Below, one piece after another: positions 1-40,458 of a stretch of DNA of 64,000 nt; position 1 is the stretch's first letter, and every line of letters begins with the position of its first letter. The DNA lies in assembly GCF_052425735.1 (NCBI RefSeq), contig NC_135765.1, forward strand, positions 31,558,001 through 31,622,000. Reading direction: 5' to 3'. Source of the stretch: Oculina patagonica (lineage: Eukaryota). Below the pieces are notes generated by a model, which saw only the letters and a program-made list of their open reading frames with translations, had not been told where the DNA came from and ran no database searches. Made by a program: the position numbers and the translations under genes.

Positions 1-214
1 CTTTTATCTTCTCCAACATACACTGATACATCATTGCGATAATCAAATTGATGTGATTTATGAAATTTGGTCTTGCCAATCTGTCGAGAAAGATACAGAT
101 TAAAGCGGGTTTTTAAAAAGTTCCTTTGAAAATCAAGAGAATCAACCGTAATTTCTGTCATTTCCATCGTACCTTTCGGTCAAAAACTTGGCCTGGCAGG
201 AAAGGAAGAGCCAT
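1..214 (-). CDS. EFHC2: EF-hand domain-containing family member C2 (Rib72-like ciliary microtubule inner protein), first two exons; gene runs off the left edge
   Basis: Exon 1 214-173 (MALPFLPGQVFDRK, GT donor); exon 2 from 80 after an AG (IGKTKFHKSHQFDYRNDVSVYVGEDK). Matches the recalled EFHC2 N-terminus MALPLLPGNSFNRNVGKEKFHKSQHW. Not in the ORF track. Confidence 0.85.
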
Positions 215-282: not shown

Positions 283-396
283 GTTGCTATATACGGCCCG
301 TCGCTATGATTTCTGGGTTTACCATAGCAACGGCTTCGAAATCTTACATCACTCTTGATTGGTTAACATAGTTCTATTCTTCAAATTTGAACCAAT
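283..396. promoter_or_regulatory. Bidirectional promoter with RFX X-box-like motifs and CCAAT boxes
   Basis: TTTACCATAGCAAC at 318-331, weaker GTTGCTATATAC (283) and GTCGCTATGATTTC (300), ATTGG at 358 and CCAAT at 392, between divergent ATGs at 214 and 539. Confidence 0.65.
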
Positions 397-538
397 CAGA
401 ATTCTGAATAGAATGTGACAATTCTCCCGCCAACCGTGTTTGTTTGCGGTTCTTTGTAGTTTTTCTAGCGATTTACATTTTTTACTCGCAAGAGTGGATG
501 AAGGTTTACGTGAAAAACAAAATGTAGAAGAAAGATCG

Positions 539-3500
539 ATGGTTTTCTTTCATAACATCAACCCTGGCGCTCGCGTCCAAGTAAGATGGCGGGGAGAAGT
601 CGAAAATGGAACCATTCGGTATGCGGGTAACTTGGTAGCTAAAGATGGCGAATGGGTTGGCATCGAATTAGACAATAGAGGTTAGTGTTAATGATGCTTC
701 GATCTCGCTTAAGAATACATTTTGGAACAAAGTTTAAAAGCCATTTAATTTCTTATTCAATATCATCAAGCCCAAATGACACTTGGTACGGAAATAAATG
801 CTAGATCGAATACAGATTTGATATCGCTTTTAAAGCTTTAACCTTGTTTCACACTTAATTAATTTAAGTACCTCGTGTTTTGATCGTAAACTTTTAAGTT
901 GATACTACTTCTTAGCTTTAAAGCCAAAAGAGGTAATAAACTACGGAACACTAGGGCACTTTGAAATATTCTCGGCCGCTCAAAATGTCGCCCTGAGTAC
1001 TTTGATCTGTAGATGCTGTGTCCTCGTGTTATGTTTTGAAAAGAATTTCTGATGCATGAGATGAATTCTTTTCGGGGAAAAAATCGCCTTTCTAACTTGA
1101 GACCATCGGGTGTGTGGCTGACATGCAAAGGAGACCAAAAGAATTAAGCCAAAAAAAATGTCTTGATTGACAGCTGTCAATCCCTATTGATTTGTTGCAA
1201 TAACAACCATATGTTGCAGCTTGATTCTTCAGTTATTTATGAGTGGATAACAATGGACAAATACTTACGTTGCATTTTGTCATTGCATTTTAAGTTGGTA
1301 ATACAAGTGGTCTGTACAAGGGGATCCAATACTTTCACTGCAGAGACGGCCATGGAATATTCACACATGCAAGAAATGTCAGATTTGTACCAAGCAAAAG
1401 AACGTAAGTTATTGAACTACTAGAGGCTCTGATGGGGAGGGGGTTTGTCAAGTTCTTGTCTCTAGTCTAAATTTTAACTAGCTCCACTGCGGCCGTTTTC
1501 AGTGTCGTCACGCAATGCTCCTCCCTGCGTGATACTAAAAATGGCGGGAGGAAACTTAATTTTGACTTGTCATCATTTGTTAATTGACCCCTGCCTTGCA
1601 TCAATCCTCCTACTCAATTTAGTGTTGCCTCTGTTAACAACCCCTGCCTCAATCCTATCACCCACCGATTTATTCACTTAATAAATACAGGGCTGTTTTT
1701 TCACAGTTTAAGGGAGATTTTTATTTATTTTTTTTAGTATTTTTTTTGTTTTTGATAACCTTTCATCAGTCCATACAAAATATAAAAAAATAAGAACTTT
1801 GAACCTCTCCTTATGGACACCTCTATAATACAGACACTTCCCTATTACAGACAGTTCATCTCATCATCTTAATCCTACTCTACTCTGGGAGTTCACTTGG
1901 TTTGAAAGAGACTTTAATTCATATAATCTCTACCTCTGTAATAAGGACACCTCCATAATACAGACACTCTTCCCTGTGCCTTAAATGTCCATACTAAAGA
2001 GGTTCAACTGTGTTACTATAAATAATACAGTTATCTCATACATGGTTAACAGTAGATTTAGTGTGCAAACTTCTTGGTCATTTCAGGTTACGTGATTCTT
2101 ACAAGCCAGTGTCCAAGACATCAGTCATAGATGAGACCCTCTTTGCTAAAACAGAAGGTACCACTGTAATCTCACTTCACCTGCCGCTATCTTTCGTTGT
2201 CTTTGTCATGAGAATTTTGAATCCCATCAAAGAGTATCCCCTGGTACATGTAGGTAGAGTAAAGTCTGCATTCAAGCCTGGTGGCCTGTCAAGCCAGAAC
2301 TCATCCAGTTTCCCAGTAGCATGAAACGACTAGAAGTATTTCTACTCCCCACTGAATGAGATGCTAGTCAATCGCAGGGTTACCCCTCAGCATTAAATTT
2401 GCCAGCACCCATTTATATACCTGGGTGGAGAGAGGCACTGTGAGAATACGTGTCTACGGTAGCCCAAGAACACAACGCAGTGACCCTGGCCAAGTCTTGA
2501 ACCTGGACCGCTTGATCTGGAGTCCGACGCGCCAACCATTAGGCCACTGGACCTCCCAAAGAGTATCCCAGCGACCCAGTTGAGGATTAAATCTTTATCC
2601 TTGTCACTTGTCTGCCTTACAATGTATTGATATTGTTAGGAGATATAAAATGTTGATCACCATACATTGGTTAAGGCTTGGTCTTCTTTATTCCTTACAG
2701 CCACCCCAGTGAAGAGCTCTTCAGATCCTGAAGTCATATCTCCCAAGTACCTCAACAGGGTTAAAACAATGATCCAAGGTCCTATATTACTTTCTTGTTT
2801 CTTTACTGGAAATTCACTATTTTAAAATTTGATCTAGTCAATTAAGCAATTCTTTGAAGTTACTAGCCTAAAGGAGGCTCACAATGGTTTCCAGCACTTT
2901 CCAGGTCTTATACTTTGATGGGTCAGGACTATAAATTTTCATCAGTTGCTGCTACAATAATGATATCAAAAAAAATTTGTTAATTGTCCAATCATTGCTG
3001 AACAAGTTGTGGTCATTTTTACGACATCACTGGTTACCATAGCAAGTAAAACCTGTTAAAAACACCCTTAATTTTTGCTCTATCAAGTAATGATCAACAT
3101 GTTAAGATACAACTTTTTTGCAAAGTTAATAAAGTTTCTACGCAGCAGTTTCAGAGCCACCAAATTGGGGGTCACCAAGGTCGTTTAAATGTTAAATTAA
3201 CCATAAAGTTAATTTTTATTTTGCCCCCCCCCCCCCCCCGTTAAATTAACTCAGACTGAAAAATTAATTTAATTTATTTTAATAGGTGAAGATGCTTGGC
3301 CTGAAGCCAGGACTAGATTTAACAAAAGCCATTTAGTTGGAGCACACATTTCACCTGCAACAAGGCAAAGAAGCCAGTCAGCAACAAGTCTCCACCGTGA
3401 AGAGTATTTTAACTGGAACAAACCCTTTATTTCTCCGTCTTCCATTCCTCACATTCATGTGCCTCGACCCATTCTCAAGAGAATGTTAGGATTTGAATAC

Positions 3501-3539
3501 TTTGGGACAACAATTCCAAGATATTCTAGTCTTTCGTGA
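539..3539 (+). CDS. Small CAP-Gly domain protein, about 217 aa, 5 exons
   Basis: Exons 539-680, 1295-1403, 2087-2157, 2701-2778, 3286-3539, all GT-AG, 654 nt in frame. CAP-Gly signature GTIRYAG..GEWVGIELD..VGNTSGLYKGIQYFHC..GHGIF. Confidence 0.8.
2241..2557 (-). mobile_element. tRNA-derived SINE
   Basis: tRNA-like head with A/B boxes on the minus strand; AAAGAGTATCCC target-site duplication on both sides; homologous copies at about 6807-7015 and 38264-38507. Confidence 0.8.
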
Positions 3540-3930
3540 GGAAGTATTGGTGTCAACATCAAGTAGTGTGAGAAAACGTATCTCTAGGGGTTCACAGTAG
3601 TCTAGGCTTAGTACATGCTTGGGTATTTTGATGGGGAGTTGATCACCTTAATTAGAACAATGAAAGTCTACTTCAGTAACCATGATTAGGCAATCACTAA
3701 CAATCAAAGAAAAACCAAACAACCTTTATAGGTAAATATTTAGCACTGAGCCATTTATTTTCAAACAAAAGGTTGTTACTGAAAGTAGTTTTACATGTAC
3801 AACTGTAGGAAACCTTTCCTCGAAATTCATTGAAAACCGTGTATCTGGCTTTTTTGATACGAAAAACACCGTGAAACATTGTAAACAACCACAAGAATGA
3901 CAATGATATTTCGCTGATTAGCTACTATCA

Positions 3931-4190
3931 TAGCCTTGCAATGCGTGCAGAGAGCTAAGTAGCAGTAGACTTTCACATATTGCAGACCTAAATATCATTA
4001 TAGGCATGCAATGTGTGAGAAGTATGTGCTGTATCTTTGCCACATCATCCAATATAGTATTTTAGGCATGCAATGTTTGCAGACAGGTAGCCCTTTGCAC
4101 ACATTACAGGTCTATCATACTAGTGTTATAGGCAAGCAATGCATGCAGAGAGCTATGAAGTGATAGACTTCTTTGCACATTGTGGGCCTA
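3931..4190. repeat. Degenerate tandem repeat, four units of 62-70 bp
   Basis: TAG(G/C)C(A/T)(T/A)GCAATG core at 3931, 4001, 4063 and 4129. Confidence 0.6.
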
Positions 4191-4737
4191 TGATGTCCAA
4201 CATATCTGTTGTGGTTAACTTTATCTTAGTTTTAATTTTTTTTAAGCTGGTCCTGAAGAGAATCCAGAAGAGGTTGAAAGTTCTAGACGATGTCAGTGTA
4301 ACTTTTTCACGCTCCAAACGGTTGAAAACAAATAAATCTAGAAGAAAATAAGCTGGTTTGATTTTTACAGTATTTTCCATTGTCTCATAGTCATGAGCAT
4401 AATCTGAAACAAAGGGAAGTTAAGTTCATACTGGTTTGAAATATTTTAAAGCCGAAGGTAAATTTAAACCACAACATATCCAACTACATTGTATACAGTT
4501 TACATTCCATGTAAATTTCTAGTTACAAAATCTTACATGCATACAACTTCTGTTGGTTTCTTCATGTTTATGTATATATTTTGCTAAATATCACTAAAAA
4601 CCTAGCACTGTTAAAACAATTTTTTGTTTGCATAGTGTTGTAAGATTTTTTACAGTTACATAAATATATTAAACAAATGCAAGTTTACATCTTATGTTAT
4701 GTGACTGAGCCACCAGGTGTTGTTTTACTAGTAGATG

Positions 4738-13588
<8,851 letters not shown>

Positions 13589-14643: not shown

Positions 14644-17271
14644 TCAGTCTTTTGGCCATATCGAGATTTCACGAATGATCACCCAATGTTTTACTTCTGC
14701 AATTATTTTAACTTTTAAGCATTTTGCAGGAAAGCTTATAACATTTTCCAAGTGCTTTGCGTCTAAAATAGGATCAACAAAATGACCTATTTTCGTGCAC
14801 TGTGATTCGTCACAACTGTTCGTTGCTGTGTTTGTTCCGCACGCTATAACAACCGCGCTTGAAAGCACGTCTCTAAACAGTGGGCTCCCTGTGGTTATGA
14901 GAACGCGTGAGATCCGAAGAGGTTCTTTAAACTCCATGGTAAAGCTATCATCTACTTTTAGTGTTTGGAGCCAAGCGAAACTTTCCATCTCTTTAAAAGC
15001 TTTTTCCAATCCATGACTTCCTTCAAACTTTATACCAGTCGTTTTAAATTCAACTTCGGGTTTTGCCCCGCGAAGTTGGCTTCCCATTTTAAACAAAAAC
15101 TCGCCAAGCTTCTGGTTGGTTACTTTAACATTTGTTCGTAGATATGCATGGACGTCCATTATTTCAAAAGGCAGACGTCCTTCTGTGAAAAGGGCGCAAT
15201 ATTCAGCCAAATCCTTAAGCATTTCCACTGAATAAAGCCGTCCCAGACCAGGCAGAGAATTCTCTCCTAAATGGTGTGCGTAGAAAATAATTGTTTTTCT
15301 CTTCAAAATTATCAATTATTTGTTTAATGGCTGGGAAAAATGGCTTGATGGTTCGCGCCTGGTCGGTCAGATGTACGTAGTGCGCTGACATTCGCGAGCA
15401 ATACTCAAAAAGAAATGTAAGTCTCTTGTTGAAATCCGAGGTATTTTTCTTGAAATCGTCCGTAGTTGATGCGATACTTCCCCATCCCAGGGGTTCCCGG
15501 CTGACTTCCCTCAGAAATTCCCCCGTGGGATGGATGACTTGAATGAGCCCACTGTCGAGTTCGTCCTGAAATTCGTCTTTTGTTCCCTGTAAGATGTGCT
15601 GCCTTTGGATCCTCCTTCGAAAACCACGACAATAACAATGTCTGACTGCTCTGTGGCTGAAATGTGATCTTGTCAGGGAATGAAGAGCTTGCTATTAGGT
15701 TATCCTCTTCACCTCGTGTGCTCACAATGCCAATACTCAGGTAAACTGGAAATGAAGTAAAAAGAAGTTAGGAACAGGCATAAGCTCAGGTCTCGGTGGT
15801 TTAAATGGTTGAATATGTTAACTACTATCAAGTAGTTAAGTGTCTTAATTAAACCACCGCACTATCCACCGTTATCTTACGGAAAAATCACTCTCTAGGA
15901 TAGTGATTATCAGTATCACGTTCCAGGCGCCGGAGGGGAGCAGCGCAAGGAACAGCAAGTGAAAAAAAATGGACGAGTGTCAGTCGGAGAGCTCTCGCCT
16001 TAAACCCCTTGCCATTTTTTCCACTCCCCGTTCTTCGCGCTAATCCAGTTCCAATCCCCTCCCCACCCATCCACCGCCCAACTAACCGAACGCCTGGAAC
16101 AGGTTAATTTATCAGAGAGATATAGCCGTGTTCTTTCTTTAGACATCCAGGATCATGAGTATACTGAAGCAGGATCAAGTTCCAATTTTAACAAATACTC
16201 GCAAAAGAACTCGCAGAATTTATGAGCCGCATTTTCTAATTCGAAAATAGCACGTGTACTATAAGAGTTACTAATAAAATTGTCACGCAAGCTTGTCACG
16301 CGAGTTTGTCCTCGAACTTGTCGCTGGCGGTTTTCTCGGGCGATGGAAAAACCTCAAATATACAACTTGTTAATACGGCCTCTTCTTTCCTAATGAATGG
16401 GATTCATGTCGTGCTATTTTACCTAAAAAGAATTGCGAGCATACACAAACGGAAGGAAAGCTTTTAGTGGGTGTAAAACTAATAAAAACAAAAGTCACAA
16501 AAGGCGAAGCAATTAACTGGAAAAGAGCTATATCCTTTACTTTTAAAGTACAATATATTACACTAACACATTTTTTTCAGCATTACAATCAGGATAGATC
16601 AATGTACCTGTCTGTTCTTTTTGCCTTCCGAGAACGAGTCCCTGGCTGGTATTCACACCATCTAATAACCGTTTGGTACAATGAGCGGACGGACACTGTG
16701 TCACAGGCATCCCAAGACTGATATCTGACTTTATGCATGTAAGCGACAATGAAGTGTGCTTGAAGTAAATGACCTGGCGAATAACAACAACAAAATAAAA
16801 ACAGAGAAACACGGCACAGAATGTAAGGTTCTCTATTCAGAATAAATATGTTGAAATATATTTTTTTCTAATCTACAAGGATAAAAGAGCAAAGCTTTTA
16901 CGATAAAATATTATGTAAAATCAATTTTCTATTCCGACAACGTTGCAAAATCGGTATTTAGAAAATTGTTTTGACTAATAAGACTTCTCGAATCGAAAAT
17001 TAACTGGGGTCGATCTTTGTTAAGATTTGCAAGAATGAACTAAGATTAAATAAAACCTATTAGATTATTTTGTTCGCGAAAATATCTAAGTTCATCCCGC
17101 CAATATTCCGCTCACCGGAATATTACTGTACATGTAATCGACAAAAAATATATCCCCCGAAAACTACAAGCTACAAATACAAGATAATGAATACTTACTC
17201 TTTAACACCATTGCAGCATTAAATAAAATGATTCCATATAAAGTAAACGTGAAGAAGTTTTGTTTCCACAT
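14644..17271 (-). CDS. MGAT4 (GnT-IV, GT54) family protein with C-terminal lectin domain; frameshifted in this sequence (assembly error or pseudogene)
   Basis: Exons 17271-17199 (type II signal-anchor MWKQNFFTFTLYGIILFNAAMVLK), 16773-16608 and 15745-14644. Blocks YLSIGIVS, DIVIVVVF, SGLIQVIHP, FLFEYC..SAHYVHLTD, FFPAIKQII, GLGRLY, FKEPLRISRVLITTG match recalled MGAT4C but lie in different frames. Confidence 0.75.
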
Positions 17272-17355: not shown

Positions 17356-17423
17356 TTTACCATAGCAACCATACTCAACCTGAAAGCACGTAGGTAAAGA
17401 AGCTTCACTGTTGCTATGGCAAA
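17356..17423. promoter_or_regulatory. Inverted pair of RFX X-box motifs upstream of the MGAT4-like ATG
   Basis: TTTACCATAGCAAC at 17356-17369 and GTTGCTATGGCAAA at 17410-17423. Confidence 0.6.
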
Positions 17424-19381: not shown

Positions 19382-22300
19382 ATGGATTGGAACGTCGAAG
19401 AAGTCGTTCACTGGTTAAAAGAAATAGGGCTTTCAAAATACGCCAAGAGATTTAAAGGTAGGTAGTTTTTATAAAAAATTACTTTAACCTTTTCTTTGAC
19501 CGGATATACTTGCCTAATGAAATAAAATCAACTCTTTAATGCTTCAAGACTCTCTCTCTGAATTTGACCAGCCGTGTAGATTGAAGTGACGCTAAACAAA
19601 ACTGTCGCAAAGTTCTGAAAGTTGTGCAATATTCGGCATAAAGCACTTGAGTTTTTATAAAATTTCTTATCAAGGTCCACTATCGTGGAAAGTTGTGTAA
19701 TTTTGCTGATATTTAGCTCTGTTTTGTTAGCTTTCACAGTTGAATTCTCATGTATTAGTTATGATTTGTGATTTGTATTTTAGGGTACTTGGTGAATGGA
19801 GCTGTCTTAGTGCAAATGGACGAAACATTACTAGGTAAGTATATATGGCGGCAAAGTTGACCTTGATATTTAGTACTGCCATAACTTACCATAGGTCTAT
19901 ACGTGTTTTAGTTACTCCCGCTGAGGGCTTCTGAAAGTTCTCTCTTATCCTGTGTCCCGCACACTTAATTTAAGCGAGTCTCCTGGCTTAACTCAAATTA
20001 TCTACCTGCAATCGTGTCTAGAAGCACGCGTAGAAGTTCTACTCTATAAACAAACATACATTAGAAACCACAACACAAGTATCTTCTACAATATTCGAAC
20101 AGTAGTTTCTTGAAATGCTCTATACTTTGGCCGGATATATATTGCTGAGGCTGTTACAGTCTAGATGATTTTCGAAAGCTTTAGAAAGTTTCTCTGTATC
20201 TGTACGAGCCTTTGTGGCTAATAGTACAAAAGTTGTAGATTTGTACGCTAAGTACAGATGTCACTGAAAGGATAACCAGCTTCAGTTATTGTTTATGTAC
20301 TTCATTTGTGATCATATGTTAGAGCTTCATTCTCAATCCCTTATCTTCAAGCAGATAATGCGTAAGTCTATATATTAACTCGGTAGTTTTGCTATTTAAT
20401 TAGGGTAACAAGAAAAATAAACACTTTTCTATCGTTTGCTCTTGCTTGTGTAACAAATATTTTCAGTCTTTGAGCTAAGTTTTCGATAATTATTCCGCTC
20501 GCCTTTGTTTTCAATCCATTCGCTTGTCAAAGCAGGCAAAAAGACTAACAATGGCGAAATGAATTATTTCCATTGAACCGTAATTGTCCATTATCTCTAC
20601 TAGCGTAATGTTTTATGCTCCACTTAACTAAACCACGAATTAGCGATTTCATGCAAATCCTGCAAAGTCACGACAACACCAAATTGTTGTTTCGCAACTG
20701 TTTGCTCTGACTTTGTTTATACTTTGATTAATAGTTTATCACTTTACGCTAAAGCTGAATGTATGGAAATATAAACAACCAAAACTTAGCTTAAAATATC
20801 AGCTTTCATCCACAAACAAAATTGAAGATTTTTAATAAAGAAGTGTAGCTTTTAAGGAAGTCAGTATTCAGAAACCGACCACGGTGATGATTTCTGGGTA
20901 ATATTGTGCTTGTTTTGATTTTCAATTCACACAGATTGAACCCGATGGAACTTAATATATATGTTTGCCTGTGGAAGAGGCAATAGAAGCTCCATAGTAA
21001 TAAAAGATTTTCAGAAGAAGTTAAAGTAATAACCGGTTCTTTTCCGAATCGAACAAAAATGCTCGTACTTGATCGTACATGTGCACTAGCCATATAACTA
21101 ATCGGTAAAAACGGAAAATGTAGACGGCAAACTGATCCTGACGGCTACAGCGGTCAAAAATAAGCAAAATAGTTAAAAAACTAAAAATATATTGAAAAAA
21201 CTTTGCCTGATCCAGGTCTTCAAGAGATCCCGCACCATTCATCGGTTTGTCACTGAGATATTGCAGATTTTTATAGATTTGTAACTAATGTAACGTTTTA
21301 ATGAACTTCTTTTTTCAAGTTTAACTTTGATAGACATACACATACTAGCTGGATTTAGGATTTTAGAGTTTTCTTTTAGATCAACTTATATACCATTCTC
21401 AGAGACCCAGGGGCAGTTAGTGGGAGCGGGGGAAAGTCTATACGGGCGAAAACAAATCGGCGAAGAAAAGTCAATTCTTCGCCGATTTTTTCTCCGAGGA
21501 TGCTTATATACTGCAAAGTTTATGAAACACAAATTTTTTGTGCTCCAAAGCTGCAGAGATGTTTTCTTAAAAAACAGGCAGATTGTCTGGTTCACAGTCT
21601 TTTCAATACTTGCTCTGTGGAGATGTGAAAAGTTTTTATACCCTCCAAAGCGACGGACTCAACAAGCCCAGTTTAAAGGCAAAATCAACACTTATCTTCA
21701 TGTTTGTCCTTCTTCTGTTTTCTTTTTAGATGATCTTGAAGTCACCGATCCTAATGACCGGAAAATTCTTCTCGGCGAGACCGCTAAGCTGAACTCGGCA
21801 CAAAGCGACGAATCACAAGCGTTGTCTACGATGAAAGAAACACAAAGCACGGTACAGAGTGCACCAGTTTTAGACACTCCACTCATAACTGTGAGCAATT
21901 TTGATGACGGTGAAAACGGACCAAGATTGGTTGTCGTATGTGATAATGATGACGATGACATACTGAACAACAATCGGAGAATATCTAATGAAGAATTGAT
22001 AAATCAAAGAATTATAAATTTGGCCTACAGAGATGGAGAAGACTCAACGACAGACGATAATTCTGAGAGAGACTTTAGTTTTAAGGACAGTGATGAAGAA
22101 CAAGGCTTTGGTAAGTAATGCATTTTTATTTTTACCTGATAAAACAAATGTAACACTTCTTAACAAGAAACAGCTCCCTGTTTCATTGTGGACGGATTTT
22201 GCACGTAGTGCATCCCTATGTCCCGAGAGAAAGCCAAGGTTTACCGCGTTCCGTCCCAACCCTCCAAGGAGAATGACTCGTACCGTTTCATCGATCCCGC

Positions 22301-25300
22301 GATTCGTGGGACCGGATGATTTCCGCAACTGTTGCCAAAGTAAAACAAATAATAGAAAAAAAACAGTGATATTTGGCTTTTTCTCTTTCTGTAGATATTT
22401 ATGACGACACAGCTGTTGAGTCGACGCCTGTAGCGTCCGCAGTTGCTACAAGAGCGACACAAATGGTCGAACTGTTGTCACGTGATAATGTGGCGTTGAG
22501 AGAAAAACTGGAGAGTGTGTACCTCAAGATGAATAACATGCAAATGGTAAGAAAAATATCTTTTATTATTCTAGCCTGCGGCTCGTGGATCTACAATAAC
22601 AATGTTATGACGAGATTTATCATCAATAAGAGAACAGACGCATAAAAAACTGACGTCAATTTGTTAAATGGAACATGCGCAGTCGCAGCACGTGTGTCGC
22701 AATCCTGACCTTGATCACAGAGCCTTCGCTTTTATGGACAGCGGATTTGTGCCAGTAGAAGAGAAAGCATTGGCAACGAGGGTTTTTGGTGGCCAAGCAA
22801 TGAGAAAGCCGACAATAAGATATCAGGAATGATATTAATAAGGAACTTCTTACCTTAAATGCCAAATTGCTGGCGCCCTCATTGGCTAATTTTTATCATC
22901 AATAAAAGGCACAGACATGAAGCTGGCGCTGACGCGCGGATCTGAAAGAAATATATAATGGAAGGGTTGTAAGTTCTCGATATAGCGACCAACTGCTTGT
23001 GAGCAGAATTCCTTTAAGACTGAATTCAGCTGTTAAGCGGAAACTATAGGAATTTGTTTTAGTTTGACGTGAAAATTTATCGAAATGGAATCTGGTGTTT
23101 GTTTTGCCGTGTTCAAAATAATTGGCGAGAGTGGATTTAAGCTCGGGAATACTTCAGCGAGTTTTCAAGAGCTTCCAAATAGAGCAAAGGTTTGTTTCAG
23201 GCAAAATTTATTCTTGAGTTATTTTACGTATGATTTGAAGGTTAACTTGGCCGATATTTTATCAATTGATTTCAACTCTTGACCTCACTCTTGTGAAACG
23301 TTTGTGTCTTTTCACCGAGTTGAACTTTGTTTTAAGTTTTTAATTTTTGTTTGGTAATTTTAAGCTGAAATAGACTTAAAAATCGACTTTTGTTATATAT
23401 TGCAGCTTGAATGCGAGCTAGAGAGCATGCGCACTGCTTATGAAGAGCTACAAATGTCGTTCAGAAAACGAGAAAGCCTTGAATACAGCACAAGGACACG
23501 AATGGAATCCGAGATGAGCAAGCTACAGGAGAGCAACAGAAATCTGCAAGGTGAGAATATATTGAATTTATAAACAAAAATTCTTGTAAAAAAAATAGGT
23601 GAAGTGTAATTATTCTGATTTGCTTTAAACCTCTATTCAGAGGAGGAGTAATATTCAGTAAAGGAAAGTTTTGTTTTGCTCGATAGTATACAAAGACCCG
23701 TCATTTTAGCATGTGGCAAGATAAATATTATATTATCAAGGCTAGAAACTGAACACGAAAGCTTGTGGTAAATAAACTCACTTATGAGTGAAAATTAAGA
23801 GATACACATCCAGGTCACGAATATAATCAGAGCGAAAGGCAACTAATTTATTGCGGAAGAATTTTTTAAGGTCAGAAGAGGCAAAGTTGAGTTCCAAATA
23901 TATCTATGGTTTTGCACCTTAAAATGTAGCTTTCAAAAAAGCTAGGGATAAGAGGTATATAATAGAGGTAAAAACGCTTCTAAAATTAAAAAAATAAACG
24001 GCTTTTTGGCATTCAAGAATTGGGTTCACAGGAAAATATTATTAAAAATATTTTGCAAAATACAGATGGCGACTCAAACACGCTATTTAATGACCCATGG
24101 GTTTGTATTTACATTGAATTGGAAATATAGTAAAATTTTCAAAAGTGCAATATTTTTAAGGACGTCTTTTAAATCGATATCTGATCATGGCTTAAAAATT
24201 TATAGAAGCTAGGTCACGCGTTTTTAAAATTGAACGAAACTTGGTAGTTAGAATGAAAAACAAAGGAAAAAAGGATAGTGCGACTTAGAAAAGACTGTAG
24301 CGTATTGTAGCTTATTGTAAAGATGACTATTTTGTTTCTCCGGCACCAAGCAAAATCAAGTCTTCGTCTGCAATTTGTATCAGATGAACACTGGGTTCAT
24401 ATTAAATACTCAGACATCCAAGACAGACATCCAAATTTACAGCATGTTTAATATCCTTTTTAATATGTTCAAAGCCTTGTAGGAAATTCAGTAAAAAATC
24501 GGACAAAATAGCGGGCATGAGCAAGCTAACCTTTTACATCAAGGTGCATCATGGCATGCATTTGTGAACTGCTATAATACGGATAGTAGATATGAAGTTA
24601 ATGGGTCCGCCGTTAAGAAGATGGGAAGAAAGCTGATTAATCGACATTGAGCACATGAAAAGGGCAATTGACAACGTTTAAGAGCAAATTAAGTGCGATT
24701 AGTTTGTATTGATGCAGTAAGACTGAAGACTACGGAAGAACTCAAAGAATAACACAGAAAATAATATTTGATGGTAATACCACCGAATAAATGAAACGAT
24801 TGTGTTTTGTAAAGGTAGGATTAAATGTTAATACATGTAACTAGGAAAGAGTGCTGAGTTTATTTATGAAAACGATAGCAAATGGTAAGCATATCTCTTT
24901 TTGTTGTTTCAAGAAAATGATAGCACATTGATATTGTCAGTTATAGGGACTGTGTCACGGATTTTAGCTAAATTTAAGCATGGGAAAATGACCATCTAAT
25001 CCGTTGAAATATAAAATTAACCTCTTAAAACAGTAAAGGAACGTTTCAACAACACACCAAATACAAAAGAAAGTACGGATGGCCAAAAGTGACGAAGATT
25101 GAAACGGATTGCGATATGAGTTTTTGAAATAGTGTTGGGCTGAACAGTTTTCAAAGTTAGTCTCGTTTGCTTGTAACTTTAAATTATAACGCCTGTGAGA
25201 CACATTTGGTGGCAGTGAAGCTATAGTTTTGTCATTTGGATCCATAGAAGTAATTTCTTTGCAAAACATTAAGTTTCATAGGGAGTATTTGGCAAAACTT

Positions 25301-28300
25301 AAAAGATTAAACTTAACTCAGCCGTGACAAAGTCCCTTTTAAAAACTGTCTTCTTATTTTAATTCTCGTCGACAGCTGAGCTAGACACATGCAAGGACGA
25401 AGTTGAGCAAGGAAAGGTAATTCACTGAAATAGAACAGTTAATTTAAAACGATGCTGTATTGGACCTGAATAGCAGTCGCTGCCATTAATTAGCGTCTAC
25501 TGACTCTATGAACAAAAAGGAAAAACGATCGAAAAGCCGATGTTTTCTCTCGCCTTACGATCGTTTGGCTCGACAATCTGACGCTCTTTTCGCGCCTTAC
25601 ATAGGCTATGCCTCCTGACAGGCACTCAACAAATCGACATGTGTCCAGATCTCACATCTTAATCGCTAAGGAGCATGTATTTGACATAAGTGCTATATTA
25701 TTTATTCAATATTCATTCAATATCCCCTCAACGTTTAATATGTTCTGCCTGTTTTTTTTTTTACAGAAATCACTAGAGAAGTTCAAAAGTGATCTACAGC
25801 TAAAGAATGAAGTCATTCGACAGCTCATCGCTCAAAGTAATGCAACAACGCTCTTATTGAGCTACATTTTAATGTCTTTTATCCTGCAGACCCCACAAAT
25901 AACAGATACCTACACCACCCCGGACAACAATATGACAAATAGCAAAAAGAATGACAAAAAAAAAAAGAAATCAACAACGTAGGGATATTATCTCGATTCA
26001 CCACCAGATTTTCAAAAGTAAACCTTAATGAGAATATATTTCACTGATTTTGTGACTGTACGTAAATGTTAATATTGGTGCCAAGATGTTATTTTGACGC
26101 TGTAAAGAAATTGATTGCTTTGACATGTATTTATAGCTATGATCTCATTTCATTTATATTAACTTTTTAATATTGAAGGGGGGATAGAATAATGGCATGA
26201 TGACGTTTCTGGCTTTCTCTTCAGCTCCGATGCATCCAAGGAGCAGAGCCCTTTCTTTTCCACTGATATACTTGAGCCTCCTCTCTTAAGAGAGGCTCTG
26301 TTCGCAGGGGTGGCTCCGATGTTGTTCAAATGATTTGTTGTGGTTGCTGCTATTTTGCTAAGTATTAACAAACAGTTTGTAAACGATGTATCATTCAATA
26401 AGAGAAGTTGCAATGCTTTCCATAAATAACGTTTCTTTCAGTTAGATTTTTATAAAATGGAAAGAAAACCAGGCCCAAAAAAGGTTAGTGTGGCCGTGCT
26501 TGGGTTTTACATTGCCATGATATTGTCTTACTTTAGGTAACGGCTTTGCATCCACAAGAGATGAATTAGAAGATACATTAAAACAGCAAAGAAAACAGAT
26601 TGAAGAACTCGAAAGAGACAAAGATCATCTGAATTCTTCACTGGTACAGAGTGGAGAGAGAATATCCTTTCTTCAACAAGAGGTGAAAATCAATGCACAT
26701 AGTTAGGCCAAGTAAAAAAACCAAATGGTTCTCGTCTGGATATGTATAAAAAAGAGAGCGGGCGGGCGCTTTTTAGTTATTTTTTATTTTTTATCAGTTT
26801 TGTTGTGTTCCTTACCTGTGTTGTTCGAATATCTTCTAGAAAATTCTCTAGAAGCGAACTTGCAAAATAAATCCTGCAAGGTAATTGACCTATCCAGTAC
26901 GGACCTGGCCGGCCAAGGCTTTAAAATTTTGGCTTGGGTTCGTATTAAAACGCAGACAAAAGCCATGTCTTACAGAATTTTTAACTACGTACACAGTGAA
27001 AGTAAAGCCTGTTGGTTTTATTTTCGTTCCAACTTTTTCAGTGACAAATAATAAAAAAGAGGGGTGACCCCAAAAAATGAAGCGGGCGGGGACGAGAAAC
27101 ATTTGTTTTTTTGTTGTTGTTGTTGTTGTTTTGTTTTGTTTTGTTTTCTTTACTTAGCCTTATGTCGTTTATGTGGTTTCCGAAACACTAAAACTTGTCT
27201 AAAACTCGGATAAAGGATAGATAAACGATATATATATGCACTAACAGACTGAAGTGTTTTATTACAGCTCAAACAGCAGCTACACACAAATCACGTGAAT
27301 ACCACGAGGAAGGCACATGGTGCACACGTGACGGAAAGTAACTCGGCAAATCAAGACACGTGTTCAACGACGGAAGAAAAGATGCCACATCACCGACACT
27401 CAAACTCGGCTGACGAAGGAATCGCTGAATTAGATGGACCTATAAGTGTACCCATCTTGTTGGAATTGTTGAGAGAAAAAGATGATAGAATTCAAGTGCT
27501 TGGAGAAAATATATCACGGGTAAGAGTCGACCTACAAATTCTCCTAACTTATCAAGGACACGGGGATTTCGCAGATTTTTGGTCTATTAGTGGTAGGCAA
27601 CTTTACCCACAAAAAACCGCCTTGTCTTTGAACATCTAAAGGAAGATATAACCTTAATTTGCGGATAGAAATCAACCTACAGCTTTAAATATCGATTGTT
27701 TGATGGCGTGCGAAAACAACTTGAAAGCGTAAGCCTAACTTTTTCGAGTTGCAATCCGTTTCCATCCGAGCCATCCGCAGCCAAAGATGGTCGTTAACAG
27801 TGCTCTAATATAGCAATTTGTAATAAAAATGGATTATTATTTTTAAGTTTTCTGCGACACAAATATAAATTTTTGCTGTTCAAAAAACACGTAAAATCCG
27901 TGACATAGATAGAAACTTTATTAAGAATGTCATCAACCACCTAGCTGGGGAAAAACTCTCCTACTAATACGGGGACATAACAAAAAAGAGTTAAACTAAG
28001 TAGTAGCAGTTATGGAAGATTTTAAGAGACAGGAAACTGCGACCTTGGTTCTGGACAGTTTAATCGTCAAAGAATGTATCTTTCATTATATTATGGCAGT
28101 TAATGTCACGAACTAGTATACCTAAACATTTAAATTATATCAATGAATATTTGATTAAAAATATAACACAAACAGCGGTGATAAACATTATGAAAAATCG
28201 CATTTTTATAAACTTGACGTCAAGTTTATTAAAATGCGATTTTTCATAATGTTTATCACCGCTGTTTGTGTTATATTTTTAATCAAGTTACGATGGCCTA

Positions 28301-30007
28301 AAACCAAGAGTCTCAATGAATATTTTCTTTCTTTTTTCTTTCAGCTCGAACAAACATTACTACAAGAAGGTACCTCAAGAAATTTGGCCATTAGAGCTGT
28401 TTCTGTGCCAAAGTAAGTTCGCTCTTGTTTGTAACATTTGTGTCTTTTATACCACTTTATAAAGCAAAAAAGTTATAACCGCTGGCAAGCTCGGGAAAAC
28501 ATGGCCAAAAAACGCAGAAAAACGGACTGAGATTTCTCGATTAAAGCCAGGAAGAGAAGGTTTCTGATAAACGCTTTTTGATTTCTTACCCAGGGAGGCG
28601 CGGATAGCTGCGCTGGAAAAATCAATACAAGAACGAGAAAAGATCATTGCTGAATGCAGAGTAGAAAATCTGAAATCCGTCGAAGAATTGTACGTCGCTA
28701 ACAGACGGTGTGCGGACTTAGAAGCCATGTAAGTTTGAGAAAATAGATGGTTTTGAAAATACTAAAAACAATTGAAACCTGTAGATGTGACATATTAAAA
28801 GACAACTTGTTATTTTTTGCCGTCACTGTAGAATCAAATCACTTCACTCGCAGTTAGCAGAGAAGACAACAAGACTTCGTCTTCTTCAAAGCAACAACGA
28901 CGGCGAAGATGAACCGAACGAGCCCGAATGGCCTTTGGACCCAGCCTTCTGTCGGACAGACTTCGCCCAAATGAAAGACCTGGCTCGAGACTCGTGTAAG
29001 TAGTAAGAATATACTTCCTTAGAAGCTGAGACAACTTTTTACTAACAAATGCCTAAAACTATCGTTTTTGATAAGAATGACAAATGTTCTTTCAGTTTTG
29101 ACACCTTACCTTGGCTTTGTGGACAAGTGAAATGATTGTTCGCAATGTCTGACATACTACTATATTCAGATTTACCCTGAGGCCAGTTTCTGATCATAAA
29201 AAACTCAATTTCCACTATGTTCCCAAAAACATTTAAAGCCGGGTTTTCAATAACTCTCTATTCTAAAGAACACTTATTTTTCATCGCTTAAGCGTGGAAG
29301 GAGCGCCAGTTAAATACTGGAAAGGATACCGTCACCAATTCAGGACATTTTTTTTTTCAGATGCAGAATCACTCGACTCAGGAATGTCACTTACAAATGC
29401 ACTAGACGTGAGACACACAGACCCAGAATACAAGGTATTTTATAAAATAACCGAAGATACTGCGCATGCTAGTTAAAATCGGCCAAAAGTTATCAACTAT
29501 TGTAACAGATCGCCGCAAATTCCGTATTGATGACGGACGCTACAGAAATCTGTGAAGTGTCTCTTATTAGTTCCTGCTCAATTTTGAACGACTAACCGCG
29601 ACCAATCGGAAGAACACTACACGGATCTCTTTACAATTAAACTAGATGTTCTTTTGATGGACTCTGCAAAGTTGCGGCGCTCTCGTCACAATTGTTTCGG
29701 CTCCCTCTTCTTTTTTCGCCCCTGAGTTGCTTCGAGCAAACTGCCAATCAATTTTGGAACTCATTGCGCCACAAGAACATCCGGTTTGACTGTAAAGCAA
29801 TGTCGAGGTCGATCACTTCTTGGGCAGGAAAGAAATGAACGAGCAATTCAAACAAGTTGTCTGTTTTCTTAGACTGGTAGCTTAGTAGACCTCTTGGGTT
29901 GTTGGAAGAAAATACTGAAGTCTTATTCTAAATAATATCGTAAACTTTTTCTTTTTCAGACAATCGACGAACCGGACCAACTGTCAATCCACTATTGGTC
30001 TGTTTAA
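19382..30007 (+). CDS. Angiomotin (Motin) family protein with N-terminal SAM domain, 14 exons, about 600 aa
   Basis: Exons 19382-19457, 19784-19834, 21730-22110, 22395-22546, 23406-23550, 25376-25416, 25767-25836, 26537-26682, 27268-27519, 28345-28412, 28594-28728, 28832-28995, 29361-29434, 29960-30007; 1803 nt in frame. SAM: WNVEEVVHWLKEIGLSKY..VNGAVLVQMD..DLEV..DRKILL. Motin blocks: RATQMVELLSRDN, KRESLE, LLELLREKDDRI, ELYVANRRCADLE, IKSLHSQLAEK. Confidence 0.85.
24945..25337. mobile_element. Non-autonomous DNA transposon (Kolobok-like MITE)
   Basis: TIRs AGGGACT.TGTCACGG with T/A-rich 4-bp flanks. Confidence 0.55.
28151..28286. repeat. Near-perfect 136-bp palindrome
   Basis: 68-bp arms, no loop, one mismatch, centred on TGACGTCA. 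Confidence 0.9.
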
Positions 30008-37617: not shown

Positions 37618-40458
37618 TCAATCTGCAGAGCTGTTTATATTTCCGATGCGATTGAAACGTAACCATGGAAACACTTTCTTAAACGCCTTTCTGAACTTCC
37701 GGTAGGTCAGAGTGTAAATAAATGGGTTGCAACCGCTGTTCAGCATGGCCAGTGTCGTGGTGATAGTGAAAAAGCTGTCGGGGAATGGGCACGAGCCGTT
37801 TGTAAATGTTAAACACGTGATTCCAATGAAATGAGGCAGCCAGCACAGAACAAATGTTCCATTAACAACAAGTAGAGTAAGAACGACTTTCATGTCTTTC
37901 CTAAAGAGCAAAGAAAAAAATCAACTTAATGAGAATGCCATAAGGTTTAGCCCTTGTAGTAGTAAAGCCTTTTCATGCAATTGGCTCATCGGCTCTCCGC
38001 GTTTACCTCCAGTTGCCGTAGGCAAAAAGGGAGTGACTATTCGGCACTCAGTTCATGTACTGGGACTTCTTATTAGGCTAACTGGAGTGCTATTTAGGAT
38101 AACCGGAGTGCTAGTTAGGCTAACTGAATGCTATTTAGGCTAACCACAGTGTTGTTTCGTCAGTAATATTCTACATAAACTTAGTGTTACGTGGTATAAA
38201 TATGTCTCGCTACTGTCTCACAAAATCAACTGAGTGCCGTATAGTTAGTCCCTAGGCAAGAAGCGGCTTAGGAGTATTGCTACTTCCCCTGGATGGGATG
38301 CTAGTCCATCACAGGTTAATTCCCCAGCAATCTGTCAGGTTGCCCTAACAATTCGTAGGTACCCATTTATACACCTGAGTGGAGAGAGGCACTGTGAGAG
38401 AAAAGTGTCTTGCCCAAGAACACAATGTAGCGACCCCGGCAAGGGCTCGAACCCGAACTGTTCGATCCGCAGTCCAGCACACTGACCATTAGACCACCGC
38501 GTCCGGCCCACTTTATATCTTCTACAAGCGTTTAAAATGCTTGGGAAAAAGAACTTTAAAAAAAAGATGTTTATGTTAGGATTAACTTCAACGTAACAGA
38601 GAGGAAATGACTGAAAATACCTAATCCCACACACATTAAGTCGAGGTACGGGACTACGAAATCTCAAACTTACTTTCGCTCTAAAATAGCTCCAGTTTTC
38701 TCCTTATTCATCAACCGCACAGCCATCCATTCTTTCATGCGAGCCAAGTAACCAACAGATGCCGTACGCGCCTTTATAGAAGAAATCGGGCTTTCTTGTA
38801 GATCCTGTGTTTCGTTCTCATCTGAAATAATGCCCAATTTGGATTCAAACGAACCTTTTCTTGTCCATGCACTTTTCGAGCGAGAATGTGCGGGATTAAT
38901 TCGGGACATGGCACCCGCGGGATTGATAGTCACATTTCTTTCTGTGATAACGGAAAGTTTCACTTTCTTGGTTTGCGTGTTACTTTCTGTAAACTTTGCG
39001 GGATTTTCTCGAAACATCGCCCTTTCATCCCACATTCTTGTAACATTTGTTGATCTTTTCAGTATATGTTCAGGCCGAGTTGACTTGTTACTTATGATCG
39101 CCTGACCTTTTGCGTCGCTTGGACCAGATACGTCTGGTTCCTGATTGGATCCATTTAAAAAGTCATTTTTTGCTTTTTCTTGCTCTTTCTTTCGACTATC
39201 TATTTGTGTGTTTATCTCGGCTGTCACAACCATATCTCTGTTATTGGACGTCGGAGCTTTCAACGAGTTGTGGCAGTGACCGTTTCCTATTTGTTTCTCA
39301 TCAATTACAGCTAAATTTTTGACATCTTGTTTGTCATTGGTTTGATTATATGTTGCCATGTAACTGTGCTCAGCCTCGATCTCGCCAACCGTTGTCGTAG
39401 GCCTCTCGCGTGCCTGGTGACAAGCGACTTTCATGACACTTGCGTAACACATGAATGTCACGATCAGTGGAGTCACGAAACACGTCACGCAGAGGAAAAT
39501 CGTGTAGGGTATGTTGTACTCCCATTGGACAGTACAGATGAACTCGTAAGACAAATAAACGTACCTAAAATGTCGAAAAGAAAAATGATTTAACATACTC
39601 AAGACCAATATACTCTTTCCAATTGACTTGGCAGTGGCATTTTTCTTGGGTAAAAAATTAAGTCCTTGATACGAAAATTTCCTCCTATTTTTTTAGAAAA
39701 TGAAGAAGTTTTGTAAGCCTTTTAAAAATTGGAACAGTTTTGGAAATTGAAAAAAAAATCTGACATATTTTAAAGGAAACATGGAACACAAAAATGAGTA
39801 AAATAAATATTCCCCTCGTTCCACAACTGAAAAATGACTTGTTTCGAACAATCGTGGAAGAATATCATAAACAATGACAAAATGCATGAGCGTCCAAATG
39901 TTATGACGTCATATGTAATGTTGCTTAGCAACATTTATGCAAAAGACGCTGACCCAGTCAATTTCGGAGACAGAATTACGACAAATCACTGAATGAGTAA
40001 TTTTGTTACCATGGTTACCTTGACCATCCAAATACAGGAAAAAGCGCCACAACTAACGCCTGTGCCCAGATATACAGCAATACCATTCTCGCCCTCGAGA
40101 AAGTTAATAACGATTGGTGTCTCAGTGGGTAGACAATCACCAACCAACGGTCTAAACCAATGGCGGAAAGTGTTAACATGGAGGTGATGCAGAACAAAGA
40201 GTTTGTTACTCCACTTATGATGCACAAGGTGTCTCCAAAAATCCGAGCGTTATGAAAAGCTGAGGCGGCTATCAACGGCATTCCAAAGGAGGATTGTAAA
40301 AGGTCTGCCGCAGCGAGATTTGCGAGAAACATTCCAGTTATATCATGCAATGGACGATGACGAACTATCACGAATAAGGTGAGAAAGTTTCCTACCGAAC
40401 CGATAAGAGAAATGCCAATCATTATGACGCCAGTTATATAAGAGATATCGCCCGGCAT
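37618..40458 (-). CDS. Class A orphan GPCR copy 1 (GPR161/GPR101-like), 3 exons, about 537 aa
   Basis: Exons 40458-40019, 39564-38674, 37900-37618 (phase 2 introns). Motifs GN, NLAAADL, DRW, CWLPHF, NPFIY, FRKAF; long ICL3. Confidence 0.9.
38264..38507 (-). mobile_element. tRNA-derived SINE
   Basis: Same family as 2241-2557. Confidence 0.7.

What the first reader, a model, noticed from the sequence alone, without database searches (positions are those of the whole stretch)
539..3539. Uncharacterised CAP-Gly protein with a RITA1/CFAP45-like 'DETLF' motif
Seen: one CAP-Gly domain followed by a small exon encoding YKPVSKTSVIDETLF (2100-2144), with no coiled-coil, UBL, LRR or kinesin domain. Recalled: RITA1 (YRVKARTSYVDETLFG) and CFAP45 (YRTKAVSSEVDESLFG), both microtubule-associated, carry a similar motif. 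The GKNDG loop is GNTSG, so EEY/F tail binding may differ. Inference: a novel axonemal microtubule-binding protein.
Basis: partly seen in the sequence, partly recalled or inferred. Interest (0 to 1): 0.7.

Follow-up and report, generated by a model that had tools for sequence, protein, structure and literature searches.

The report
Small CAP-Gly protein paired with EFHC
A real, transcribed coral gene encodes a 217-residue protein belonging to an unnamed family of marine invertebrates. The family combines a microtubule-binding CAP-Gly head with a short motif also found at the start of the ciliary protein CFAP45, and in corals and their kin the gene shares a promoter with the ciliary gene EFHC. 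A role in cilia is therefore plausible but not shown.

Summary
Five GT..AG exons (539-3539, + strand) give a 217-aa protein identical to NCBI's 'hypothetical protein ACROYT_G029530 [Oculina patagonica]'. Spliced transcript contigs from four runs support the model. Pfam finds only a CAP-Gly domain, whose loop reads GNTSG. Exon 3 encodes YKPVSKTSVIDETLF at exactly 2100-2144.

The protein belongs to an undescribed single-copy family. Members occur in hexacorals, octocorals, starfish, a bivalve and a nemertean. All have CAP-Gly starting at Met1 and a disordered tail with five conserved short motifs.

A profile of the DETLF motif region, searched against all PDB sequences, ranks sea-urchin CFAP45 first (E 2e-4). 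Human and Tetrahymena CFAP45 follow, at E 0.76 and 1.7, not significant on their own. Pfam RITA is matched only below threshold. The motif's function is unknown in both proteins.

New evidence: in four anthozoan genomes the gene lies head-to-head with a three-DM10 EFHC (Rib72-type) gene. The start codons are 280-370 bp apart, with an RFX X-box-like site between them. In starfish and the nemertean the head-to-head partner is TAF6 instead, with no consistent X-box.

Verdict: a new variant of CAP-Gly protein. It is probably a cilium-associated microtubule binder (about 0.5), but it has not been localised.

The parts
318..331 (+). X-box-like (RFX) site TTTACCATAGCAAC in the 371-bp interval between the start codons of the EFHC-like gene (167, - strand) and the CAP-Gly gene (539)
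   Evidence: One mismatch to GTNRCCATRGYAAC. The window holds 8 such matches against 0.37 expected from shuffles. Sites with at most 2 mismatches lie in the same interval in Nematostella, Dendronephthya and Xenia. RFX binding was not tested.
436..4262 (+). Minimum extent of the transcript: 5' UTR from at least 436, 3' UTR to at least 4262, AATAAA at 4331
   Evidence: Contig pieces (X2 record 7 covers 436-678; X1 record 1 covers 472-678, 1293-1403 and 3287-4262). Contigs cannot fix the true ends.
539..680 (+). Exon 1: start codon and first half of the CAP-Gly domain (aa 1-47)
   Evidence: The piece alone matches Pfam CAP_GLY at E 1.3e-7. The 680|1295 joint is seen in 4 runs.
1295..1403 (+). Exon 2: second half of the CAP-Gly domain (aa 48-83), including the GNTSG loop at 1297-1311 where canonical domains have GKNDG
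   Evidence: The piece alone matches Pfam CAP_GLY at E 1e-6. Coordinates. Joints.
2087..2157 (+). Exon 3: motif of the RCR / CFAP45 N-terminal type, DSYKPVSKTSVIDETLF (aa 87-103, nt 2094-2144)
   Evidence: Conservation. The profile hits CFAP45 and, below threshold, Pfam RITA.
2701..2778 (+). Exon 4: conserved DP..[IV][ST]..YL segment, a predicted short helix at aa 122-132
   Evidence: Alignments. AlphaFold2 helix 122-132 with block pLDDT 75.
3286..3539 (+). Exon 5: rest of the disordered tail and the stop codon. It holds the motifs F[NH]KSH.VG (3318-3341) and FIS..SIP..HVPR...KRM....YFGT.IPR (3426-3536).
   Evidence: Alignment A3. The exon-5 search found 12 library proteins at E<=0.001: ten are family members or fragments of them, two are repeat-rich proteins I set aside. 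This tail occurs once in the genome.
3..167 (-). First coding exon of the head-to-head neighbour, an EFHC1/2 (Rib72-type, DM10) gene that continues upstream of the window
   Evidence: Translated. DM10 exons lie at G000:C8:31550518-31555619 on the minus strand, 2.4-7.5 kb before the window start. The exon alone has no Pfam hit.

Best explanation
The gene encodes a small microtubule-associated protein of an unnamed, ancient family shared by cnidarians and bilaterians.

Shown: the N-terminal CAP-Gly head is a well-predicted, typical CAP-Gly fold. The remaining ~135 residues are intrinsically disordered and carry five conserved short linear motifs. The first motif is the same one found at the N-terminus of the B-tubule inner protein CFAP45 and twice in the microtubule-associated protein RITA1.

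Inferred: the head holds the protein on tubulin, or on a partner with a C-terminal aromatic tail. The tail motifs either lie along the lattice or recruit a shared partner of CFAP45 and RITA. In anthozoans the gene is transcribed from a bidirectional, X-box-bearing promoter shared with EFHC (Rib72-type), so it is made in cells that build motile cilia and acts at the axoneme or basal body.
For: - CAP-Gly: Pfam 68.7 bits. The AlphaFold2 head has pLDDT about 90. Foldseek gives TM 0.91 and rmsd 1.7 A to the p150Glued CAP-Gly.
- The groove residues W39, Y60, F61, G68 and F70 are invariant; H67 is invariant among the 12 divergent members and I69 nearly so.
- A profile built from the tail alone retrieves only CAP-Gly proteins, from Anthozoa, starfish, a bivalve and a nemertean. 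The architecture is therefore conserved.
- Orthology is backed by adjacency to TAF6 in octocorals, starfish and the nemertean.
- The motif profile ranks CFAP45 of sea urchin first (E 2.1e-4); human (0.76) and Tetrahymena (1.7) CFAP45 are also among only 5 PDB matches.
- A three-DM10 EFHC gene lies head-to-head with start codons 280-370 bp apart in Oculina, Nematostella, Dendronephthya and Xenia.
- Each of those intervals holds an X-box-like site, against a background of 0.05-0.28 per kb.
- The gene is transcribed and spliced as modelled.
Against: - There is no localisation, proteomic or cell-type expression evidence.
- No chain of any solved axoneme, including sea-urchin sperm doublets (8SNB), matches the family beyond the CFAP45 motif.
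- In starfish and Lineus the head-to-head partner is the housekeeping gene TAF6, and no consistent X-box is present. The X-box in anthozoans may therefore serve EFHC alone.
- X-box-like sites are generally frequent in this window, and the intergenic regions do not align well enough to call the sites orthologous.
- The canonical GKNDG loop is absent from every member, so binding of EEY/F tails is uncertain.
- The motif is not a demonstrated tubulin-binding element in RITA or CFAP45 (PMC8909099, PMC10541116).
Confidence: 0.5

Rival explanations
1. It is a general cytoplasmic or centrosomal microtubule-associated protein, a miniature CLIP/p150/CEP350-like CAP-Gly adaptor with no special link to cilia. 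The EFHC neighbourhood in anthozoans would then be a historical accident kept by a compact shared promoter.
For: - The best sequence matches of the head are the CEP350 and dynactin p150 CAP-Gly domains.
- RITA1, which carries the same motif, is a cytoplasmic and spindle microtubule-associated protein (PMC11747798, PMC8909099).
- In starfish and Lineus the promoter partner is TAF6, a housekeeping gene.
- Transcript contigs occur in bulk samples of several studies.
Against: - An EFHC pairing with start codons under 400 bp apart is kept in both hexacorals and octocorals, with an X-box-like site in each.
- The motif is shared with CFAP45 from ciliates to humans.
- No hit came from vertebrates, arthropods or nematodes. 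A core cytoplasmic microtubule-associated protein would be unlikely to show that pattern, though the searches have length and word filters.
Confidence: 0.3
2. It is a true microtubule inner protein of the doublet. The tail motifs would bind the lumenal tubulin surface next to CFAP45, ENKUR and EFHC. The CAP-Gly head would engage tubulin C-terminal tails that face the B-tubule lumen at the ribbon or inner junction.
For: - A disordered tail with several conserved short motifs separated by variable linkers is typical of inner proteins.
- The first motif is shared with the N-terminus of the B-tubule inner protein CFAP45.
- That N-terminus cross-links to ENKUR (PMC10541116).
- The gene appears co-regulated with the A-tubule inner protein EFHC.
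Against: - No CAP-Gly chain is modelled in any solved doublet in the PDB.
- CAP-Gly domains are known from the outer surface and plus ends of microtubules (established knowledge).
- The family is missing from the organisms whose doublets have been solved (vertebrates, Chlamydomonas, Tetrahymena), and no sea-urchin member was found. It cannot therefore be a core inner protein.
Confidence: 0.12
3. It is an annotation artefact, or simply a fragment or isoform of dynactin subunit 1, as automatic names in other species suggest.
For: Relatives in Nematostella, Acanthaster and Patiria are named 'dynactin subunit 1(-like)'.
Against: - A complete spliced transcript exists with its own start, stop and UTRs.
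- The length and both termini are conserved across phyla.
- A separate locus with the Dynactin domain PF12455 lies on another contig (C2:20.865 Mb).
- The protein has no Dynactin domain and no coiled coil.
Confidence: 0.02

Closest known systems
Dynactin p150Glued / CLIP-170 / CEP350 CAP-Gly domains (Pfam PF01302)
   Same: The same domain by sequence (E about 1e-15 to the CEP350 and DCTN1 CAP-Gly domains) and by predicted fold (TM 0.86-0.91). As in p150Glued, the domain sits at the extreme N-terminus and is followed by a disordered region.
   Different: No coiled coil, Dynactin domain, zinc knuckle or ankyrin repeats. The GKNDG loop reads GNTSG in stony corals and G[KNDSYT][HTNSG][NSCD]G in the rest of the family. 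The tail is unique to this family. The true DCTN1 lies elsewhere in the genome.
CFAP45 (FAP45), B-tubule microtubule inner protein
   Same: It shares a 20-30 residue N-terminal motif, roughly Y..[VI]S..S.VDE[ST]LF. It is the top PDB match of the motif profile, at E 2.1e-4 for the sea-urchin protein.
   Different: CFAP45 is about 500-550 aa with a long helical trichoplein/TPH region and no CAP-Gly domain. The coral protein has neither the length nor the helices. Similarity is limited to the motif.
RITA1 (RBPJ-interacting and tubulin-associated protein, Pfam PF17066)
   Same: The motif corresponds to positions 17-76 of the RITA model, the region of the first 'RITA conserved repeat' (PMC8909099). 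Both are small, largely disordered proteins linked to microtubules.
   Different: Scores stay below the Pfam cut-off, at most 16 bits against 29. Reading the sequence directly, there is no hydrophobic-W-hydrophobic-P site of the kind that binds RBPJ (PMC6337844); the only W-P is A-W-P-E. RITA has no CAP-Gly domain, and its tubulin-binding domain is a different, C-terminal region.
EFHC1/EFHC2 (Rib72), the head-to-head neighbour
   Same: Shared promoter region in four anthozoan genomes.
   Different: No sequence relationship. The pentapeptide FHKSH occurs in the neighbour's first exon, and the tail motif here is close to it (FNKSH in Oculina, FHKSH in several relatives). The tail profile finds no EFHC chain in the PDB, so I treat this as chance.

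Membership tests
CAP-Gly domain proteins (PF01302) | Match to the Pfam model above the gathering cut-off | tested here: met
   68.7 bits against 26.5, E 4.2e-19, residues 11-76. Both exon halves pass on their own.
CAP-Gly domain proteins (PF01302) | CAP-Gly fold | tested here: met
   AlphaFold2 pLDDT about 90 over residues 11-80. Foldseek TM 0.91 and rmsd 1.7 A to the p150Glued CAP-Gly; 45 CAP-Gly structures rank first.
CAP-Gly domain proteins (PF01302) | GKNDG loop that contacts the EEY/F carboxy-terminus | tested here: not met
   GNTSG at aa 49-53. No family member has GKNDG: the starfish have GKHSG, unidentified members GKHNG, the bivalve GDNDG. Binding itself was not testable here.
CAP-Gly domain proteins (PF01302) | Conserved hydrophobic groove residues (W, YF, HGIF) | tested here: met
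   W39, Y60, F61, G68 and F70 are invariant in the family; H67 is invariant and I69 nearly invariant. They align with the p150 residues.
Dynactin subunit 1 (p150Glued) | Dynactin domain PF12455 and long coiled coils after the CAP-Gly domain | tested here: not met
   Only CAP_GLY is found. The protein has 217 aa with short helices only. The PF12455 locus is on contig C2.
RITA (PF17066) | Match to the Pfam model above the cut-off | tested here: not met
   Best 16.2 bits against 29, limited to model positions 17-76.
RITA (PF17066) | RBPJ-binding hydrophobic-W-hydrophobic-P motif | tested here: not met
   Read directly from the sequence of P0013: the only W-P is A-W-P-E. The motif definition is from PMC6337844.
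CFAP45 | Long helical trichoplein/TPH region of about 400 residues | tested here: not met
   No Pfam match, and only three short helices are predicted in the tail. The PDB match to CFAP45 covers residues 15-49 only.
Microtubule inner proteins (structural class) | Seen inside the doublet lumen in a solved structure or by biochemical fractionation | tested here: inconclusive
   No homologous chain in the PDB apart from the CFAP45 motif. None of the species with solved doublets is known to have the family.
RFX-regulated ciliary genes | X-box within a few hundred bp upstream of the coding sequence (100-250 bp in C. elegans, PMC2873420) | tested here: met
   TTTACCATAGCAAC lies 208-221 bp upstream of the ATG. 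Comparable sites with 2 mismatches occur in three other anthozoans. No consistent site occurs in starfish, nemertean or bivalve. RFX binding is not testable here.
RFX-regulated ciliary genes | Expression dependent on RFX/FOXJ1 and enriched in ciliated cells | not testable with these tools
   Only bulk contigs were available. No supplementary table with the Nematostella accession was held.

The most novel reading that the evidence does not exclude
The RCR / CFAP45 N-terminal motif is an ancient docking peptide, present from ciliates to animals, for one conserved partner. Candidates are the enkurin domain, to which the CFAP45 N-terminus cross-links, or a tubulin surface. This family would use the motif, together with a CAP-Gly head that reads tubulin tails, to sit inside or at the junction of the ciliary doublet. 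That would make it the first CAP-Gly microtubule inner protein.
Probability: 0.1. Interest if true: 0.8.

Novelty: new variant of a known kind. Interest (0 to 1): 0.55.

Why it matters
It defines a conserved, single-copy family that nobody has named. Public annotation calls its members 'hypothetical' or, wrongly, 'dynactin subunit 1'.

It ties together three proteins through one short motif: CFAP45, a human ciliopathy gene; RITA1, a Notch and microtubule regulator; and this family. The motif's partner is unknown. Because the family is small and has a simple architecture, it offers a clean system for finding what the motif binds.

The tight EFHC pairing in anthozoans gives a concrete, testable link to motile cilia. 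Its absence from vertebrates limits direct medical relevance.

Tried and rejected
- Text search for the motif strings (DETLF, DESLF and similar) found only noise.
- The exon-5 search also returned two large repeat proteins, P0006 and P0011, which are compositional false matches.
- The profile of the C-terminal tail found nothing in the PDB at E<=10. The shared 'FHKSH' with the EFHC N-terminus is therefore taken as chance.
- ESM Atlas feature search of the tail gave no usable hit.
- Scanning the coral's own genome with the motif profile found only this gene plus three spurious repeat-derived matches. It did not find the coral CFAP45 or RITA exons, which is not evidence that they lack the motif.
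- I looked for the Nematostella orthologue (A7SUE3, EDO32673.1, XP_001624773, XP_032227931) in papers and in supplements of cilia and apical-organ studies. Nothing was held. The original RITA papers were not held either.
- The papers I could read on CFAP45 structure say nothing about its first ~50 residues, apart from the cross-link to ENKUR.
- The four anthozoan intergenic regions are too diverged to align, so the X-box-like sites cannot be called orthologous.
- Complex prediction was not run. Tubulin and enkurin genes in this genome are split by introns, so no complete partner sequence could be given by reference. There is no verdict on binding.
- The two earlier scan notes on other CAP-Gly genes in this genome are unrelated.
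Full report
**1. The gene**

The window is eukaryotic DNA of about 38% G+C with no N. An earlier scan note and the database name of the product place it in the stony coral Oculina patagonica.

On the + strand, five exons join into a 654-nt reading frame of 217 codons: 539-680, 1295-1403, 2087-2157, 2701-2778 and 3286-3539. All borders are GT..AG, and an in-frame stop lies upstream of the ATG. The product is letter for letter the database protein P0013, 'hypothetical protein ACROYT_G029530 [Oculina patagonica]'.

Contigs of four public runs from four studies carry the spliced form.
- The joints 680|1295, 1403|2087 and 2157|2701 are seen directly.
- One 1483-nt contig covers 472-678, 1293-1403 and 3287-4262.
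- Exactly the length of exons 3 and 4 lies between those pieces, so the last joint is inferred.

The gene is therefore real, transcribed and complete.

**2. The observation**

Pfam finds one family in the whole protein: CAP_GLY, residues 11-76, 68.7 bits against a cut-off of 26.5. Nothing else appears at E<=1. Each exon half passes the cut-off on its own.

An AlphaFold2 model built on 18 family members gives the head pLDDT about 90. The tail scores 40-60, with short helices at 100-103, 122-132 and 194-202. Foldseek puts 45 CAP-Gly structures first, with TM 0.91 and rmsd 1.7 A to the p150Glued domain.

The loop that is GKNDG in canonical domains reads GNTSG (1297-1311).

**3. The family**

- A search of 1.8 billion cluster representatives with exon 5 alone found 12 proteins. 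Ten are relatives or fragments of them. The other two are repeat proteins that I set aside.
- Profile searches added named members:
  - Nematostella ('dynactin subunit 1', 221 aa);
  - Actinostola;
  - the octocorals Paramuricea, Dendronephthya and Xenia;
  - the nemertean Lineus.
- A profile made from the tail only, without the CAP-Gly domain, still retrieved only CAP-Gly proteins. It added the starfish Acanthaster and Patiria, the bivalve Tegillarca, and several unidentified sequences (one from a Tara Oceans metagenome contig, others from Logan assemblies).

All members are 207-268 aa and begin the CAP-Gly domain at Met1 (MV[LF]F.NI..G.RV). All share five tail motifs:
- [DN].Y..[VI]....S.[VI]DE[TS]LF;
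- a short helix around YL;
- [FY].[KL].H.[VI][GS], read in Oculina as FNKSHLVG;
- [ST][IV]P..H[VM]P;
- a C-terminal G[YW]......PR...[LV].

The tail occurs once in the coral genome. No hit came from vertebrates, arthropods or nematodes. The searches have length and word filters, so this is suggestive only.

No member has the GKNDG loop. The starfish have GKHSG and several unidentified members GKHNG, so the coral GNTSG is a further departure.

**4. The motif**

A profile of the motif region from 16 members was searched against all 177,635 distinct PDB sequences. It returned five matches at E<=10, and three of them are CFAP45:
- sea urchin (8snb_3W, residues 15-49), E 2.1e-4;
- human (7ung_a), E 0.76;
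- Tetrahymena (8g2z_1O), E 1.7.

All three matches fall at the N-terminus of CFAP45. The human and Tetrahymena matches fall at the same place but are not significant on their own.

Pfam RITA is hit by 9 of the 16 segments, but only at 14-16 bits against a cut-off of 29. The matches are confined to model positions 17-76. This is a shared motif, not family membership.

What the motif does is not known.
[quoted passage not shown] - In Tetrahymena the CFAP45 N-terminus is unresolved in the doublet structure and cross-links to the C-terminus of ENKUR (PMC10541116).

The step 'DETLF motif, therefore microtubule binding' is thus not established.

**5. The neighbourhood**

Neighbour in the coral:
- The window starts inside a gene on the opposite strand, whose start codon is at 167. 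Its first exons read like the N-terminus of EFHC1/2 (recognised from memory).
- A genome search with the DM10 model then found DM10 exons at C8:31550518-31555619 on the minus strand, just before the window. This is one of only two DM10 loci in the genome.

Other anthozoans:
- In Nematostella, Dendronephthya and Xenia the orthologue lies head-to-head with a 736-aa three-DM10 gene.
- The two start codons are 280-370 bp apart in all four species.
- That arrangement has survived since hexacorals and octocorals split.

X-box-like sites:
- Between the start codons Oculina has TTTACCATAGCAAC (318-331), one mismatch from the RFX X-box GTNRCCATRGYAAC.
- The other three species each have a site with two mismatches in the same interval. 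The local background is 0.05-0.28 such sites per kb.
- Ciliary genes typically carry X-boxes 100-250 bp upstream of the coding sequence in C. elegans, and the RFX DNA contacts are conserved across animals (PMC2873420).

**6. Limits of that evidence**

- In Acanthaster, Patiria and Lineus the head-to-head partner is TAF6, not EFHC. I found no consistent X-box there.
- In octocorals TAF6 lies downstream, tail-to-tail. A weak TAF6_C match at 8346-8573 on the minus strand suggests the same in Oculina.
- The adjacency to TAF6 supports orthology across phyla. It also shows that the EFHC link is specific to anthozoans.
- X-box-like sites are frequent in this window generally: 8 against 0.37 expected from shuffles.
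- The intergenic regions are too diverged to align.
- No solved axoneme chain matches the family beyond the CFAP45 motif.
- I could find no proteomic or single-cell record of any member.

**7. Reading**

The gene is not dynactin subunit 1. It has no Dynactin domain or coiled coil, and the real locus lies on another contig.

My best reading is a small microtubule-associated protein whose CAP-Gly head anchors it and whose disordered tail carries docking motifs. In anthozoans it is made together with EFHC in cells that build motile cilia. My estimates:
- microtubule association: about 0.85;
- association with cilia: about 0.5;
- a true lumenal inner protein: about 0.1.

The main rival is a general cytoplasmic or centrosomal microtubule-associated protein.

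**8. Novelty**

The domain is known. The family, its architecture and its link to the CFAP45/RITA motif are not described in any paper I could search. I class it as a new variant of a known kind.

Noticed in passing
window 3-167 (- strand) and G000:C8:31550518-31557500: The head-to-head neighbour is one of only two DM10 (EFHC1/2, Rib72-type) genes in the genome. The same pairing occurs in Nematostella, Dendronephthya and Xenia.
   Followed up: yes
window 318, 3033, 17356, 17410, 37659, 40005, 50691: X-box-like sites (GTNRCCATRGYAAC with at most 1 mismatch) give 8 matches at 7 positions, against 0.37 expected from shuffles. They include a perfect palindrome at 40005-40018 and an inverted pair 54 bp apart at 17356/17410, the first identical to the site at 318. 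Either RFX-type sites are common in promoters here or a repeat carries them.
   Followed up: partly
window 8346-8573 (-), 14644-15315 (-), 19382-30007: Weak TAF6_C and MGAT4 C-terminal matches lie downstream, followed by the SAM-angiomotin gene noted earlier. The order EFHC, CAP-Gly, TAF6, SAM-angiomotin is the same in the octocorals Dendronephthya and Xenia. MGAT4 lies beside EFHC in Nematostella.
   Followed up: partly
window 1671-2004 and 2172-2672 (introns 2 and 3): Interspersed repeats give very high summed contig depth, up to about 30,000 at 2339-2505, and many loose ends in all four runs. The element at about 2330-2560 looks like a SINE. It is unrelated to the gene's product.
   Followed up: no
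window 3-167 (-) and 3318-3341 (+): The pentapeptide FHKSH occurs in the EFHC neighbour's first exon. The tail motif here is close to it: FNKSH in Oculina, FHKSH in several relatives. The tail profile finds no EFHC chain in the PDB, so this is probably chance.
   Followed up: yes
L005 (Tara Oceans metagenome scaffold, 907 bp): A family member (P0035, 232 aa) is encoded without introns on a short marine metagenome contig. Its organism is unknown. It could be a transcript-derived contig or an intronless copy.
   Followed up: no
L004, L019, L020: In a nemertean and two starfish the orthologue is head-to-head with TAF6, 0.8-2.7 kb apart. The adjacency of CAP-Gly and TAF6 is therefore older than the split between cnidarians and bilaterians, but the orientation differs from anthozoans.
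   Followed up: yes
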